A stretch of DNA of 44,887 nt from Trichosphaerium sp. ATCC 40318 (taxonomy: Eukaryota; Protista; Tubulinea): contig JALMLS010000599.1 of the NCBI GenBank assembly GCA_038496445.1, forward strand, positions 1 to 44,887, written 5' to 3'. A program made the translations under genes and the position numbers. The notes beneath the pieces were generated by a model. It saw only the letters and a list, made by a program, of their open reading frames with translations. It was not told where the DNA came from and did no database searches. The number at the start of each line of letters is the position of its first letter. Position 1 is the stretch's first letter. Positions 37,801 through 44,887 of the stretch are shown here, piece by piece.

Positions 37801-40542
37801 TTACTCAGTTAAAGGGTTTCCTCAGGAAGAGACCTTGGGAAGCAAAATACTTATGGGATGAAGTGCGATCTTAAATTATAAGATTTGATGTCAAAAGTGA
37901 ATTTTGACGTTTTTAGAACCCTGTGAACACAAAAACTATGTTTGATTTGTACTTTGATTTATGGAGACCATTTGGTACTTGTTTAACGAATATCGAACGT
38001 CGTGGTGTCAAGGTATGCATGTTATTAACATTGTTTCAGCCAATATTAATTATACGCAATGTAGGTTAATGTAGATTACTTAAAACTCCTTGAACCACTG
38101 GCGGAACAAGATATCAAGAAATACCATGACTTCTTCCGTAGATGGGCTATTAAACACTGTGATGATGCAAAATACATGAATGCTTGTACGAGAACAGCTA
38201 TTGGTTGTCCAAACAGTTTACTAAGACTAACCTGTAGCGTCTGATGCACAACTTCAACAACTGCTGTTTGCACCTTGTAACAATAAGAAGAACACTTCAT
38301 TGAAACGTGAAGCTGAGAAGACTTTTACTATCATCTTCCAGGATGAAGAATGGGCAGAAATGGAGAAACAAGCTGAGCTTGAAGCTGCTATAGCAGCAAA
38401 AGAAGAAGAAGAGGCTAAAGCTAAAGAGACTGATTTTGAAGAAGTAGAAGAAGATCTTGGTGAAGCTCATGGAGGAGCTATTTCTTCTGATGCTGTTAAT
38501 GAAGAAGTAGAACAAGATCTTGAGGATGAAGAGGGTACTGATGTGGATTGGATTCAAGAAGACAAGACACCAAAGAAGAAAAAGAAGAAGAAATCTAAAA
38601 AAGCAAAAGCAAAGGAAGAGGAGTTTGGAGAAGAAGACGTATGAAAAATACTTTGTGATTTAGTACCCTTTTTTGTTCTTTTCTTTTAATGATTTATTAG
38701 TTGTTTGAAGATGAAGAGGCTCCAGAAGAACCACCAAAGAAGAAGAGGAAGAAAGTCAATAAGAAAGAGATTGTCCTCAAAGGCATGGGTTTGCCATACT
38801 TTGTACGTCTTGTTTAAAGAAGTAGCAAGCGTTTAACGTTGTGTGTTAATTTTAGGATGTAACAGCATCAGGGTGGCCAGCTGTTAGTGCAGATGCTTTG
38901 CGTAAGTTGGCAGGTGAACCACCAAACAAGTATGGTGCATTGTTCAGATACCAGAAACTTCGAAGAGGTACACTTTGGTGGCTACGACACTAGTTGTTAT
39001 ACACTAACAAATATACTATAGCTGGACAAAATAATGCCATGTATGCTTGTGAAGCTATTAGCGCATTGACTAAGGCATCACAAATTGAAGTTCTCTTGAA
39101 CACTTTTATAAAGCCATTGCAAGGTAAAGCTGTTTAACTTTTTTTTTGTTTGTTAACACGTGTTTTGTATAGTTATTCCAGACGAAAATGGGCGTATTCA
39201 TGCATCATTGAATATCAATACAGAAACTGGACGACTTTCTTGTAGAAAACCTAATCTACAAAATCAACCAGCTTATGACAAAGACACTTACAGGATTCGT
39301 TCAGCATTTACCTGTGAGCCAGGAAACAGTCTTATTGGTACCACCAACATCTTTTTGTTTAATAATTCTGTATTGACCATCGTGTAGTCGCTGATTATGG
39401 GCAACTGGAATTAAGGCTTCTTGGACACATTACACGATGTGAGAGTATGTTACAGGCATTCAAAGAAGTACGTATAGAAAGCAGCATTGCTTTTGCATCT
39501 AGATGCTAACAGGTTTTTGTCAAGGGCGGAGATTTTCACTCAAGGACAGCTGTTGGTATGTACCCAGAGATCAAAGAGGCTCTTGATAAAGGAGAGGTAC
39601 ATATATCTATGGTGTACGAGATATTCTTCTTACTAATAATAAACTAGGTTCTTTTGGAATGGGATTACGCCAATGGCAATCCTCCAGCTCCACTTGTAAA
39701 AGAAAAATATGCTACTGAAAGGCGACGAGCTAAGATGCTTAACTTTTCTTTGGCGTATGGTAAAACTGTTGTTGGTCTCTCTAAGGATTGGGGAGTCAGT
39801 GAGACAGAAGCGCAAAAAACGCTTGACGCTTGGTACGAACAACATACGTAGTTGAGCATAAGAAGCTAACACGAGAGTTAAAAATAGGTATCGAGATAGG
39901 CCAGAAGTTAAAAAATGGCAAATGTGGTCCAAGAGGAGAGCAGAGAAGTATGGTTGGACAAGAACGTTGATGGGTCGGTATCGTCCACTTCCTGCAATGT
40001 CAGAAAGAGGAGCCATGCGAGGTCATGCAGAAAGAGCAGCGATTAATACACCTCTTCAGGTAAATCATTTCTTAAGCCATTGTTTTGTTAGTGCACTTCT
40101 GATGCATTTTAGGGTGGCGCTGCTGATATTATGGTTAAAGCTATGCTGTTGATAGAAGCACATCCGAGACTAAAAGAACTCAAATGGTTACAAGTGATGC
40201 AGATTCATGATGAAGTAATTCTAGAGGTAAACAAAAAACCAGCCGTAAGAGTAATTATCTAACTTTATTCAAAAAAGGGACCTGAAGAACACCAAGATGA
40301 AGCACTTGAGGTACTAACGTTTTAAGCTTATTTGGTGTCTTATTGTATACTATAGATTGTAATGGACCTTATGCGTAACCCAGTTCATCCTGGTGATGTC
40401 AAAAAGCCATTGCTTGTTGATCTCGTTGTAGATAGTAATGTTGGTAAAAACTGGTACGAAAAATGAAGTCTTTAAGTTGTTTTTTTTGCTAAGCTACAAC
40501 TTGTGTTTTCTGACTTTTTTGTAAAGGTATGAAGCCAAGTAA
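34842..40542 (+). CDS. POP: Organellar family-A DNA polymerase (POP type) with 5'-3' exonuclease, 3'-5' exonuclease and a mitochondrial-presequence-like N-terminus
   Basis: Arg-rich N-terminus. 5' exo: LLIDG, YEADD, KDKDL, GDSADN. 3' exo: ACDTE, GPDLDFGNG, WHNYSFD. Polymerase: TETGRLS, ADYGQLELR, RRRAKMLNFSLAYG, QIHDEV; ends NWYEAK*. Confidence 0.93.
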
Positions 40543-40896
40543 GTATCTCGATTCATTTTTTATTTTGGGAATGGAGGGCATGTATAATAAAAAACTGGTT
40601 GGAAGAACAATTCGAATGAAGTCTGAGAACATATTATGTAATATTTGTTGAACCAGTTGCATTTTGTTTGAGAAATATTGACGTCAGAAATGATGATCAA
40701 CCTACGGTTTGCCGTTAAGGTAGAAACATTATCAAACATCAGCAGGATGTTTTACATTAATAGTATTAACTCGTTTCTCTGAAGAGTTCCAGCAATTCTC
40801 CTGTTTCGTACCGTTTTGTGAACTTTAAGTCACCTCAAGATAATAAAGTCATCATTCTGACGATCCAACTTGTTCAAAGACTGGTTTAGTAGTGTC

Positions 40897-42489
40897 ATGG
40901 CAAATACTGATATTTGGGAAGCTGAAGAGATACTAAAACGGCGAAATACGAAGGTTGGGTCAACTACAAGAATAAAAGTAACTGTCTTTAGACCGGAACG
41001 GAATACCTAGTTAAGTGGTGCGGCTATGGAGTAGAAGACGCAACTTGGGAGGTAAAAGCAATCAAGAACAGCAAGTAAACACGTTGTAACTCTCTACATA
41101 GCCTGAGGATGACGTAGACGATGTTTTAATCTATAAATTCGTTTCCAGAAAGAAAGTACATAAACAACCCTCAAAACAAGCGTCAAAAAGTAAAAAGAAG
41201 CGTAACAAAGCCAAAGAACCACAACCAGCACTTACAGTAAATCCAAAAGAACTTTTTGATCTAGAATGGGAAAAGGGAGATCCAAGCCACTTTTTCAAGA
41301 AGTACCCTTACGCTGATGATGGATATGTTAAATCTTTCGATCCAGAGGATAGCAAGACATACCTTGAGTACTTGAAGACATATGGATTCGTTGTTGTTCG
41401 TATCCTAACAGAGGTAGAATGTGAGGCTTCAGTGAAGGTATGATATTTATCTATTTTTAACTGCAACTTATCACGTGATTTTTTTCGGTATAGGCTTTAT
41501 TTGAAGAGGCTAATGAAGCTGCTGCTGATACACAGAAAACAAAGATTTTATTGGAAGATCCAATGACATGGGAGATTGAGAATTGGCCCAGTAGAAGCAA
41601 GTTTTTATTCCGTGGTGCTGCAGTACATCCTATTGCATGGAAAAATAGAGTGAACAAAAATATGTACAAAGTTTTTAGTGAGATTCATGGAACAAAGAGA
41701 TTATGGACTTCAATAGACTTTTGGAGTCTAATGCGTGGTTCATCAAATCTACGGTTTGTTAAAGAAGATACAAAGGAAGTTTACTATACATCAAGAAAAG
41801 ACTGGCGTTATCAACTTTCTCTTCATTGGGATCTAAATCCATGGGATTATGTACAAAGGATAGAAAAAGGTCTTACAGCAAGATATCAGGCTCTTGTAGC
41901 TTTAGTAGATTGTCCGCAATCTGTAGGCGGATTCTTACCTGTACCAGGATCTACACGTTATCTTCCTAGATGGTATGTGTTTTTTTTAATTTTAGAAACT
42001 TTTCTTTTATTTGTGCTGTTGACAGTACCAGTGCATTGTATTGTTGTTTGTCCTGCCATAATGTTAATATGTTAGGTGTTCAAAACATAAGAAGAAAGAA
42101 GGCGACGTATCTATTCGTGTGCCTGCTGGTGACATTATGCAAAAACACACACAAAGAGTGCGTTTTCATTTTTTAAAACTCTACTGTCATTTCTTGTTAC
42201 TTTTTTGTACAACTTACATCTGTACAAGATTCCAATACGTAAGGGTGAGATGGTTATTTGGAATTCTGGCTGTGCACATGCAAACTATTCAAATAACTCT
42301 GATAAAATGAGGTTAATACAATTTGTTAAAATGGCGCCTGCCAAAAAAGAGTGCTATGATAGAGAAAAAAGGGCAGCTCCTCGTATGTTGGATGATGTAC
42401 CATCTCTTAGAGAAGAGCTATCAAAGATACAACTTGATGATTTTGGAAAAAAACTATTTGGACTCAAAGATTGGACTGCAGATGATTAA
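40897..42489 (+). CDS. Chromodomain fused to a PhyH-like 2-oxoglutarate/Fe(II) dioxygenase
   Basis: WEAEEILKRR..EYLVKWCGYGVEDATWE|PEDDV (chromo), then YGFVVV, LHWDLNPW (HxD), YQALVALVD..GGFLPVPGS and GEMVIWNSGCAHANYSNNSDKMRL (distal His and Arg). Confidence 0.85.
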
Positions 42490-42688
42490 AGCATATAACT
42501 CTTGTAATAACATATTGAATCGACACATACAATAGGTCTAATGGTCAAGTTTTGAACAAATGGTAAAGTCCATGACTAGTGTTAAGCAGACTTTACAGGG
42601 TAGGCAAGATAAAAACAGTTTAAATTGAAATAAACACCTTTTACTGTCCCTTAAAAGGGTTCTGGGCAAGTTGGTTTGTTTTCCTTCA

Positions 42689-44887
42689 CTAAGAGTACTC
42701 CTGTGGATGCTTACTAAGGGTTCTCCTGTGGTATATATTATATATTTTCTTTTTTAATGTGTTTTACAAGTTTTCTTCTTCTTTTACATTTAGCCAACTC
42801 TTTCTTCTATCTCTTTTAGAGGAAGTTGACAATAATCCTCCATCATACATTTTCGTTACTTTCATTGTGAAAACATCAGGTTCTTTAGGTTCTTTAGGTG
42901 GTACAGGCGGGGGCCTTTTACGCTTGGGAAACAAAGCAGCATTTGGAGGAGCTGGTGCGCCAACTGAAAAAAAAGTCATTAAGTCGAAAACATCAAAAAA
43001 TAAAGAAGACGAACTTGTGTTCCTTTGGCGACCTATACTTTTTCCGTTTGCGTATGGATGTAAAAAAGGTGCTGAAGTACTTCCTACAAGAGGAGGTGGC
43101 CTATTTGGCGGTCGAGAAGGTTTTAAATATCCTTCAGACTTTGAAGTAGAAAGTAGATTCGGATTGTTATAAATCGCATTGTCGTTTGCATAAGTGCCAA
43201 TATTTGTGTTTGATCTCTTCTGTCCAAAAGATCTTTTTTTTTGTTTCTTAGTATGATCATCGTCTTATGGTATTTTATTATGCGTACTTTATTCGTTTGG
43301 AGTGTTTACCACGCTTAGGTGCACCAAGAGATCTTTTTGAAGAAACTGTTCTAATTTGAGGTGCTTTTTTAGCTGACGGATCTTTCCTGCTCTCTGTCAC
43401 ACTCACAACGTATCTTGGTAGTATCTATACAATTTAGTCATTAAATATGCTGGATAGGTATGGATAGTATACCTGGTATTCGTTGAAAATCACTAACTCA
43501 TCAAAACACAATCCAGATTTTGGTTGAACTGGTTCACCGTATTGATTTACTATCAAACAATAAGAACTTGTTGCAGAATGTTTATATAATGAGTACCAGT
43601 GGCGTAGTGAGCAGTACATCCTTCCATTTGTGGTTTGCCTAGTATTGAAGGCATGTAAGTTTATGTACAATGAGCACGTGCTGATCACATGCGAGAGGAC
43701 AGCAGTTCAAGAAAACTGTTGGTGCTATTTTGGTGTACCTTTTAAGCTGATTTTTTTGTTAAGTGGATTCTCTGTTGCAGGATAAGCTTGCCCTGGTATT
43801 ACATAGCAAAGAGCTAGTGTCATCTCTCCTGCATCATCTGGTGAGCAGTATCTCTAGGTTGTAGAAGTTAGAGTTTAAGAAAATGTTGTGATGAGCTTGT
43901 GGTGAGGCTGCGTACTTGGACCATATAAGGAACTGAAGAAGAAAAGTATACCCCATCTCCAAAGTTACCATCTTTGTTCTTAAGACTAGTAGCACCACCT
44001 ATTGTTTTTATCAAAAGTAAGAGAGACGTTCAAGCTTGAACTTTTTTTCTTCTTCGTTGTTTCTTTGTTTTTGTTTTAAATAGATACTTACCTAAATTGC
44101 ATAGGTTCCATACATCTATATTACTACCTCCAAATACACAAGGGAGAATACTTATCTAAAAAGGAAAATTTAAGTAATTATAAAAGTGTTATGATGGCTT
44201 GAATGTTTTTTCTTTTTTTTTGTGGATTGTACTTTGGGATCTGCGAGTTTACATTTCGCTATCCGTTTTTGCAAATATTCACTAACAGTATTCCTCTTTG
44301 CACTACCTTTATCCTATACAAATACAATATTTAACATCAAAAATAAAGTCACAGATGTTGTTGATAGCGAAAAAAAAACCACAAAGACTTACTGTTGTTT
44401 TCCATCGTTGACTTCTATGTTTTGGATTTTCTGCATTAAAAAATTAGCACATACAATAGCTCTAATATGTAGGAAAATAAAGAGAAAGTACTACCTTTTA
44501 TAACTGTCAACTCGTGATGTTGTATATTGTAGCATTGTTCAAAATTCTTTACCATAGCTTCATTATGTACAGCGTAAATATTAACTATTTTAAACGCTCT
44601 ACCACCTAATTTAAACAAAAAGTTATTGACGCAGGTCGCTATTAAAAGTTCAACAGGTAAACAAAAAGAGTTGTCAACGATGGACATGTATTAGGAAGTC
44701 TATAATCATGACTTTTAATAAAACTGATAAACGTACTGAGCAGTTGGTTAAATATTGTGTATACTTTCTTGAGTTCTCTTGTGCTTTTTGTATAAACATA
44801 CTGAGACTCTTCTTCAAGCCTAGAATCGTATATTTTCAAGGCTTTTGTAGGTTCTTGTCCATCTTCAGCAGGGAGATTTTGCCATCC
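42689..44887 (-). CDS. PARP-like ADP-ribosyltransferase-domain protein with a Pro/Lys-rich tail; 5' end lies outside the window
   Basis: IYAVHN, LPCVFGGS, DGNFGDGVYFS, LCYVIPGQAYP, AHYA, FDELVIFNEYQ|ILPRYVV. Confidence 0.75.

What the first reader, a model, noticed from the sequence alone, without database searches (positions are those of the whole stretch)
40897..42489. Chromodomain-PhyH-like dioxygenase fusion: candidate non-JmjC chromatin demethylase or hydroxylase
Seen: one spliced frame links a chromodomain with an intact aromatic cage (W in IWE, W in VKW, Y in GYG) and a Lys-rich NLS-like linker to a 2OG-Fe(II) domain with HxD (HWD), distal H (AHAN) and 2OG-binding R (MRL). Established: chromodomains read methyl-lysine, and the well-known chromatin dioxygenases are JmjC, TET/JBP and AlkB types, whereas PhyH-like enzymes mostly act on small molecules. 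Inference: a possibly new reader-eraser or reader-writer acting on histones or nucleic acids.
Basis: partly seen in the sequence, partly recalled or inferred. Interest (0 to 1): 0.75.

Follow-up and report, generated by a model that had tools for sequence, protein, structure and literature searches.

The report
Chromodomain fused to PhyH-type oxygenase
An amoeba-like protist has an expressed, spliced gene that joins a methyl-lysine-reading chromodomain to an apparently active iron/2-oxoglutarate oxygenase of an uncharacterised protist family; I found this pairing in no relative and no paper, so it may be a new kind of chromatin-directed oxygenase, but its substrate is unknown.

Summary
Window 40897-42489 (+) is a six-exon GT-AG gene for a 424-aa protein. 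It has an N-terminal chromodomain (Pfam Chromo, E 1.2e-15; cage W7/W28/Y31; nearest solved relatives CDYL and CBX). A Lys-rich linker follows (aa 55-78). The remaining roughly 330 aa are a 2OG/Fe(II) oxygenase domain with H262-x-D264, H355 and R366.

cDNA contigs of one public run confirm four of the five introns, including those that join the chromodomain exons to exon 3. Exon 3 alone encodes the chromodomain end, the linker and the oxygenase start. Homologues align without gaps across every junction.

The oxygenase belongs to a small protist family: 230 hits among 1.84 billion representatives, from Amoebozoa, a euglenid and a foraminifer. It sits in the PhyH clan, with DUF1479 (Gig2/YbiU) as nearest solved fold; that group has no established substrate. 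None of 164 homologues or 16 metagenomic loci carries a chromodomain. Some carry an MJ1316 RNA-end domain, ankyrin repeats or a NIF phosphatase, which hints at macromolecular substrates.

The chromatin function is inferred, not shown. The scan has noted this fusion before on five other pieces of the same genome; the transcript evidence and the other fusions are what this report adds.

The parts
40897..42489 (+). Complete CDS of the fusion gene: 6 exons, 424 codons plus TAA
   Evidence: Splice model; cDNA joints; end-to-end homology
40897..41149 (+). Chromodomain, aa 1-55, spread over exon 1, exon 2 and the first 48 nt of exon 3. Cage codons: W7 40915-17, W28 41016-18, Y31 41025-27
   Evidence: Pfam PF00385 E 1.2e-15; CDYL 3e-10 and CBX6 1e-9 with aligned cage residues; coordinates
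41150..41269 (+). Lys/Arg-rich NLS-like linker, aa 56-95, lying within exon 3
   Evidence: Sequence; 7 K/R in a 10-residue window, and similar patches in the nearest homologues
41270..42486 (+). PhyH-clan 2OG/Fe(II) oxygenase domain, aa ~96-424: end of exon 3 plus exons 4-6. H262 41824-26, D264 41830-32, H355 42277-79, R366 42310-12. The conserved W311 is encoded across the exon 4/5 junction
   Evidence: phmmer/blastp to the family; conserved columns; fold of the 48%-identical P0001
40954..40991 (+). Intron 1 (38 nt)
   Evidence: cDNA joint 40951->40990, GT..AG, cut +2
41052..41101 (+). Intron 2 (50 nt)
   Evidence: cDNA joint 41049->41100, GT..AG, cut +2
41438..41493 (+). Intron 3 (56 nt), with no listed joint
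   Evidence: GT..AG; contig record 2 begins matching at 41492 with its letter 152; homologues align without a gap across the junction
41973..42075 (+). Intron 4 (103 nt)
   Evidence: cDNA joint 41971->42075, GT..AG, cut +1
42158..42228 (+). Intron 5 (71 nt)
   Evidence: cDNA joint 42157->42229, GT..AG
42490..42615 (+). 3' UTR, at least as far as the cDNA contig reaches; AATAAA at 42629
   Evidence: Record 2 extends to 42615; motif found

Best explanation
This is a real, transcribed fusion gene. Its product has an HP1/Polycomb/CDY-type chromodomain at the extreme N-terminus. A flexible basic, NLS-like linker ties that domain to a catalytically intact Fe(II)/2-oxoglutarate oxygenase from a small protist-specific branch of the PhyH clan. 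Proposed mechanism, inferred rather than shown: the basic patch takes the protein into the nucleus. The aromatic cage (W7, W28, Y31) then docks it on a methylated lysine of a histone tail or another chromatin protein. The tethered oxygenase uses Fe(II) held by H262/D264/H355 and 2OG held by R366 to oxidise a nearby macromolecule. The most likely reaction is hydroxylation of a protein side chain, or of RNA or DNA associated with marked chromatin. The chromodomain was added in this lineage to an enzyme that already existed, and was probably already nuclear, in other amoebae.
For: Shown: the gene model and its transcription. The chromodomain passes Pfam's cut-off, and its cage aligns with CDYL and CBX6. 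All four catalytic residues and 20 of 21 near-invariant family positions are kept. The family passes the PhyH gathering score in 73 of 77 members. A confident DSBH model of a 48%-identical homologue (pLDDT 93.6) matches PhyH-clan enzymes. Suggestive: other members of the same oxygenase family are fused to macromolecule-binding or protein-acting modules. These are MJ1316 RNA-end recognition (P0048 from Reticulomyxa, and a truncated P0036), ankyrin repeats (P0099), a NIF-type phosphatase (P0124) and a Cx7Cx4Cx3H pattern (P0017). A basic patch directly precedes the catalytic domain in the closest amoebozoan relatives that lack a chromodomain.
Against: There is no biochemical or localisation evidence. 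All solved neighbours with a known substrate act on small molecules; the two nearest folds (Gig2 and YbiU, DUF1479) have no established substrate in the held literature. The fusion is confined to one genome as far as I could search. The window protein itself could not be scanned or folded whole, so the catalytic-domain fold rests on a homologue. The exon 3-exon 4 junction lacks a listed cDNA joint.
Confidence: 0.5

Rival explanations
1. CDYL-like logic. The chromodomain parks a small-molecule enzyme on marked chromatin. There it oxidises a metabolite, for example an acyl-CoA or another cofactor-like compound, and changes chromatin only indirectly.
For: CDYL has the same layout, an N-terminal chromodomain plus a metabolic-enzyme fold (own knowledge), and its chromodomain is the best PDB match to this one. 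All characterised PhyH-clan neighbours act on small molecules or CoA/carrier-bound substrates: PHYH, SnoK, EctD, KanJ, SptF and SyrB2.
Against: Fusions of the same catalytic family to MJ1316, ankyrin and NIF phosphatase modules point to macromolecular partners. No CoA-binding feature was identified, and none was tested for.
Confidence: 0.2
2. The family's native substrate is RNA or an RNA-bound protein. In this protein the chromodomain serves as a general protein or RNA interaction module, reading a methylated non-histone protein in the way cpSRP43-type chromodomains bind non-histone partners, rather than as a histone-mark reader.
For: MJ1316 (Pfam: RNA cyclic group end recognition domain) is fused to the same oxygenase in two clusters, and P0017 has a CCCH-like pattern. 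cpSRP43 chromodomains are among the PDB matches. A PhyH-fold protein, RESC14, sits in an RNA-editing complex and matches at Z 15.8.
Against: The best chromodomain matches are histone-mark readers (CDYL, CBX6, CBX1, CBX8), and all three cage positions are aromatic. The CCCH match is below Pfam's threshold (E 0.03).
Confidence: 0.2
3. This is a young, lineage-specific exon-shuffling product without a selected chromatin function: a duplicated and decaying gene family in a repeat-rich genome where chromodomains are spread by mobile elements.
For: The fusion is seen only in this genome. Earlier notes list several copies, one with a frameshift, and chromodomain-like modules inside transposons of the same genome (not checked here).
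Against: This copy has an intact frame, canonical splice sites, cDNA support, and every catalytic and cage residue. No terminal inverted repeats flank it, and it lies tightly between two other expressed genes.
Confidence: 0.1

Closest known systems
CDY/CDYL (chromodomain plus crotonase-fold enzyme)
   Same: The chromodomain sits at the extreme N-terminus and is followed by a domain of a 'metabolic' enzyme superfamily. The CDYL chromodomain is the best solved match (E 3e-10).
   Different: The catalytic domain here is a DSBH 2OG/Fe(II) oxygenase, not a crotonase fold, and the chemistry is oxidative.
Reader-linked JmjC histone demethylases/hydroxylases (e.g. KDM4 with Tudor, PHF8/KDM7 with PHD, JMJD6)
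   Same: The logic is the same: a methyl-lysine reader tethered to an Fe(II)/2OG oxygenase (own knowledge).
   Different: The oxygenase here belongs to the PhyH clan. No JmjC family appeared in any Pfam scan. No PhyH-clan enzyme is known to me to act on histones.
DUF1479 / Gig2-like proteins (C. albicans GIG2 6akz, Y. pestis YbiU 4rgk)
   Same: These are the nearest solved folds to the catalytic family (Z 22.5, 285-293 residues aligned).
   Different: Identity is only 13-15%. Pfam Gig2-like is matched weakly by 4 of 77 family members (best E 0.0013). They have no reader domain, and I found no established substrate.
Phytanoyl-CoA 2-hydroxylase (PHYH) and PHYHD1
   Same: Same Pfam family, PF05721 (73 of 77 relatives pass). 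Same HxD...H triad, with the 2OG Arg 11 residues after the distal His.
   Different: Distant (profile E 0.19-0.26 against PDB sequences; Z 15.6-15.7). PHYH is peroxisomal, acts on an acyl-CoA and has no chromatin module.
Chromodomain-enzyme fusions SUV39/Clr4 (SET), CMT3 (DNA methyltransferase), CHD (helicase)
   Same: A chromodomain directs a catalytic domain to marked chromatin (own knowledge).
   Different: The catalytic classes differ; none is an oxygenase.

Membership tests
Chromodomain (Pfam PF00385) | Profile match above the gathering score over the whole domain | tested here: met
   57.5 bits against a cut-off of 25.1, profile positions 1-53 of 53
Chromodomain (methyl-lysine-reading HP1/Pc/CDY type) | Three aromatic cage residues at the canonical positions | tested here: met
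   W7, W28 and Y31 align with Y/F, W and Y/W of CDYL and CBX6
Chromodomain (methyl-lysine-reading HP1/Pc/CDY type) | Binding of a methylated lysine peptide | not testable with these tools
   Needs peptide arrays, ITC or similar
PhyH family (Pfam PF05721) | Profile match above the gathering score | tested here: inconclusive
   The window protein could be scanned only exon by exon: PhyH E 0.057 on exon 6 and nothing on exon 4. Its homologues (42-48% identical) pass in 73 of 77 cases.
PhyH clan 2OG/Fe(II) oxygenases | HxD...H iron triad, plus the Arg that binds the 2OG C5 carboxylate about 11 residues after the distal His | tested here: met
   H262, D264, H355 and R366 lie on the invariant or near-invariant family columns
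PhyH clan 2OG/Fe(II) oxygenases | Double-stranded beta-helix fold closest to PhyH-clan structures | tested here: met
   By proxy only: the AF2 model of P0001 (48% identical, pLDDT 93.6) matches Gig2/YbiU at Z 22.5 and TlxI/AsqJ at Z about 20. The window protein itself was not folded.
Gig2-like / DUF1479 (PF07350) | Profile match above threshold | tested here: not met
   Only 4 of 77 relatives match, best E 0.0013; the resemblance is structural only
JmjC histone demethylases | JmjC domain | tested here: not met
   No JmjC family in any Pfam scan; no JmjC chain is listed among the top 50 structural matches
CDY family | Chromodomain followed by a crotonase/enoyl-CoA hydratase fold | tested here: not met
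   The C-terminal domain is a 2OG oxygenase

The most novel reading that the evidence does not exclude
This would be the founding example of a PhyH-clan, non-JmjC/TET/AlkB chromatin oxygenase. The enzyme would read a methyl-lysine mark and oxidise a histone residue or chromatin-bound nucleic acid. Its chromodomain-less relatives across Amoebozoa, euglenids and foraminifera would form an unrecognised family of protein- or RNA-modifying oxygenases. The Trp-rich HWDxNPW active-site motif might be suited to a methylated ammonium group; that last point is pure speculation.
Probability: 0.3. Interest if true: 0.85.

Novelty: new variant of a known kind. Interest (0 to 1): 0.55.

Why it matters
All known oxidative chromatin and nucleic-acid modifiers belong to the JmjC, TET/JBP or AlkB branches of the 2OG oxygenase superfamily. 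A reader-tethered PhyH-clan enzyme would add a fourth branch. It would also give a functional handle on a whole uncharacterised protist oxygenase family, and perhaps on the substrate-less DUF1479/YbiU/Gig2 group, because the chromodomain says where to look for the substrate. If the enzyme instead acts on a metabolite, it would be a second, independent case of CDYL-like tethering of a metabolic enzyme to chromatin.

Tried and rejected
1. Transposon cargo or a misjoined gene. No terminal inverted or long direct repeats flank the gene. It lies about 270 nt after an expressed DNA polymerase gene and about 150 nt before a convergent expressed gene.

2. Chromodomains in relatives. A local phmmer search with aa 1-60 against 164 homologues found nothing at E<=10. 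Pfam over the 77 aligned members and over 20 longer members individually showed no Chromo. tblastn against 16 metagenomic loci with up to 4 kb of flank gave only noise. The ESM Atlas shape search showed only PhyH clusters.

3. Literature. 'chromodomain' combined with 'phytanoyl-CoA dioxygenase' or 'PhyH' returned only gene-list co-mentions. YbiU/DUF1479 papers give no function. MJ1316 is barely mentioned.

4. Direct PDB sequence search with exon 4 gave only chance hits.

5. The first related-loci run with the 77-sequence alignment failed for lack of conserved stretches. It was repeated with 12 close members.

The catalytic fold therefore rests on homologue P0001, and the window protein was scanned exon by exon.

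7. The residue numbers printed were shifted by the --keeplength option.

8. I could not work out where the first 151 letters of cDNA contig record 2 lie. The binned depth in 41364-41560 is lower than expected if they covered the end of exon 3.

Full report
**Gene model**

Reading 40500-42900 and splicing by GT..AG rules gives six exons: 40897-40953, 40992-41051, 41102-41437, 41494-41972, 42076-42157 and 42229-42489. The CDS is 1275 nt and the protein 424 aa. The first ATG is preceded by an in-frame TGA at 40858, and an AATAAA lies at 42629.

**Transcript evidence**

The one public run that holds this stretch (X1) consists of cDNA contigs. Their loose ends look like cDNA-synthesis (SMART-type) primer sequence; that identification rests on my own knowledge. 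The contigs skip short GT..AG segments in this gene and in both neighbouring genes.

- Joints 40951->40990, 41049->41100, 41971->42075 and 42157->42229 reproduce introns 1, 2, 4 and 5 of my model exactly.
- One contig (depth 10.9) joins exons 1, 2 and 3.
- Another contig (record 2, 1101 nt) joins exons 4, 5 and 6 and runs into the 3' UTR as far as 42615.

Intron 3 (41438-41493) is not among the listed joints. Record 2 starts matching at 41492 with its letter 152, which is what a spliced AG|GCT junction would give. The table does not show where its first 151 letters lie, and the binned depth does not settle the point. I count intron 3 as supported indirectly only.

The fusion does not depend on intron 3. 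Exon 3 is one open frame that encodes the last 16 residues of the chromodomain, the basic linker and the first ~55 residues of the oxygenase domain. Homologues also align without a gap across every exon junction. The conserved Trp W311 is rebuilt from a codon split by intron 4.

**Chromodomain**

- Residues 1-57 match Pfam Chromo over the full profile (57.5 bits, E 1.2e-15).
- Against PDB sequences, the best matches are CDYL (3e-10), CBX6 (1e-9), CBX1/HP1beta (5e-9) and CBX8.
- In those alignments W7, W28 and Y31 occupy the three aromatic-cage positions.

This is a canonical HP1/Polycomb/CDY-type domain, placed at the very N-terminus as in CDYL.

**Linker**

Residues 55-78 are Lys/Arg-rich, with 7 K/R in the stretch KSKKKRNKAK. 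Calling it a nuclear localisation signal is an inference.

**Oxygenase domain**

Exon by exon, Pfam sees only a weak PhyH match (E 0.057 on exon 6, nothing on exon 4). Language-model features of exon 4 point to PhyH clusters.

An exhaustive phmmer search with exon 4 against 1.84 billion representatives found only 230 proteins at E<=1e-3 and 88 at E<=1e-10. The best was 54% identical over the exon.

The full model aligns from about aa 62-105 to 420 with these proteins. P0001 gives blastp E 7e-117 at 48% identity. Named sources are:

- Trichosphaerium, Protostelium, Phalansterium, Nematostelium and Balamuthia, all Amoebozoa;
- Arcella (Amoebozoa) and the foraminifer Reticulomyxa;
- the euglenid Ploeotia.

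The window's own protein is not in the 5.8-billion-sequence collection.

In a 77-member alignment G242, G291 and H302 of P0001 are invariant, and H207, D209 and R313 are among the nearly invariant columns. H207, D209, H302 and R313 correspond to H262, D264, H355 and R366 here. The window protein keeps 20 of the 21 invariant or nearly invariant positions. The Arg lies 11 residues after the distal His, the same spacing as in PHYH and EctD (own knowledge). Seventy-three of the 77 members pass Pfam PhyH.

**Fold and nearest known enzymes**

AlphaFold2 on P0001 with this alignment gives pLDDT 93.6.

- Foldseek against the PDB returns PhyH-clan small-molecule oxygenases: SptF, PtlH, KanJ and TlxI (E about 1e-10, 11-16% identity).
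- The exhaustive VIA search ranks C. albicans GIG2 (DUF1479, 6akz) and Y. pestis YbiU (4rgk) first, both at Z 22.5 with 285-293 residues aligned.
- TlxI and AsqJ follow at Z about 20. PHYH scores 15.6, PHYHD1 15.7 and the trypanosome RNA-editing protein RESC14 15.8.
- A family profile against PDB sequences gives SnoK 1e-10, EctD 6e-7 and GIG2 0.0016.

In the held literature YbiU/DUF1479 has no assigned substrate. The catalytic domain is therefore a divergent, uncharacterised PhyH-clan lineage. Nothing in the solved-structure comparison tells protein, nucleic acid or metabolite apart.

**How unusual the fusion is**

None of the 164 homologues collected has a chromodomain by local phmmer. Pfam finds none either. 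None of the 16 metagenomic loci encoding relatives has a chromodomain-like segment within the available flanks. The Atlas shape search shows only PhyH clusters. No paper links the two domains.

The closest relative, a complete Trichosphaerium ORF, has only a 41-residue basic N-terminal tail. The chromodomain was therefore most likely added in this lineage.

**Other fusions in the family**

- The Reticulomyxa protein P0048 carries an N-terminal MJ1316 domain (Pfam: RNA cyclic group end recognition; E 1e-7).
- P0036 carries a truncated copy of the same domain (blastp E 1e-15 to P0048).
- P0099 has ankyrin repeats, and P0124 has a C-terminal NIF/HAD phosphatase-like region that is sub-threshold in Pfam.
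- P0017 has a Cx7Cx4Cx3H pattern that is sub-threshold in Pfam.
- Twelve of the 35 aligned sequences with an N-terminal extension of at least 35 aa (the window protein included) have a patch of five or more K/R in 10 residues. These include the nearest amoebozoan relatives P0001, P0016, P0152 and P0154.

These are modules that bind or act on macromolecules, which tilts the odds towards a protein or RNA substrate and a nuclear location for the family. This is inference from architecture only.

**Explanation**

Shown: an expressed gene encodes a cage-bearing chromodomain, a basic linker and a PhyH-clan oxygenase with a complete catalytic set.

Inferred: the protein is nuclear, docks on methyl-lysine marks and oxidises a nearby macromolecule.

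Rivals:
- a CDYL-like tethered small-molecule enzyme;
- an RNA/RNP oxygenase that uses the chromodomain for a non-histone contact;
- a young fusion without a selected function.

**Earlier scan notes**

The scan has already noted chromodomain-PhyH fusions on five other pieces of this genome: s1-397164, s1-397224, s1-383767, s1-409643 and s1-406797. Two follow-up agents reached the same reading. One stated that splicing was untested, and one reported a frameshifted copy. s1-406797 has exactly the length of this gene (1593 letters), so it may be an allele or a recent duplicate.

I could not read those pieces. This report adds the cDNA support for the splice model, the other fusions in the family, and the observation that the basic patch predates the chromodomain.

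**Limits**

Only one cDNA run was available, and it is kept as contigs, so transcript ends, strand and expression level cannot be read from it.

Noticed in passing
window 41169-41234: One low-depth cDNA contig (3.6, only 29 letters on the shorter side) skips 66 nt inside exon 3. The skip is in frame and removes almost the whole Lys-rich linker (about aa 62-84). Its ends read CT..AC on the + strand, which is non-canonical for this gene. It could be an antisense-strand intron, a linker-length variant in another copy or allele, or a reverse-transcription artefact.
   Followed up: partly
window 39190-40575 (+): The gene immediately upstream encodes the C-terminal part of a family-A DNA polymerase; I recognised the HDEVILE and AINTPLQ motifs by eye. 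Eight short introns (45-73 nt) are confirmed by a 978-nt cDNA contig.
   Followed up: partly
window 42770-43640 (-): A convergent downstream gene lies on the minus strand. It has cDNA support and two small introns (about 43233-43287 and 43550-43596, CT..AC on +). The product is Pro/Lys-rich near its C-terminus and was not identified.
   Followed up: no
P0048 (Reticulomyxa filosa RFI_04399) and P0036: In these two proteins the same protist oxygenase family is fused to an N-terminal MJ1316 'RNA cyclic group end recognition' domain. I did not look for a description of this fusion; it may itself point to an RNA-directed oxygenase.
   Followed up: partly
P0016 / KAL6078392.1 (Balamuthia mandrillaris): This family member is named 'Sodium channel protein type 8 subunit alpha' in NCBI. 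It is a 382-aa PhyH-domain protein (Pfam PhyH 48 bits), so the name looks like a misannotation.
   Followed up: no
window 42688-42731: Two copies of a 19-nt direct repeat, 25 nt apart, lie in the short spacer between the two convergent genes. Their meaning is unknown.
   Followed up: no
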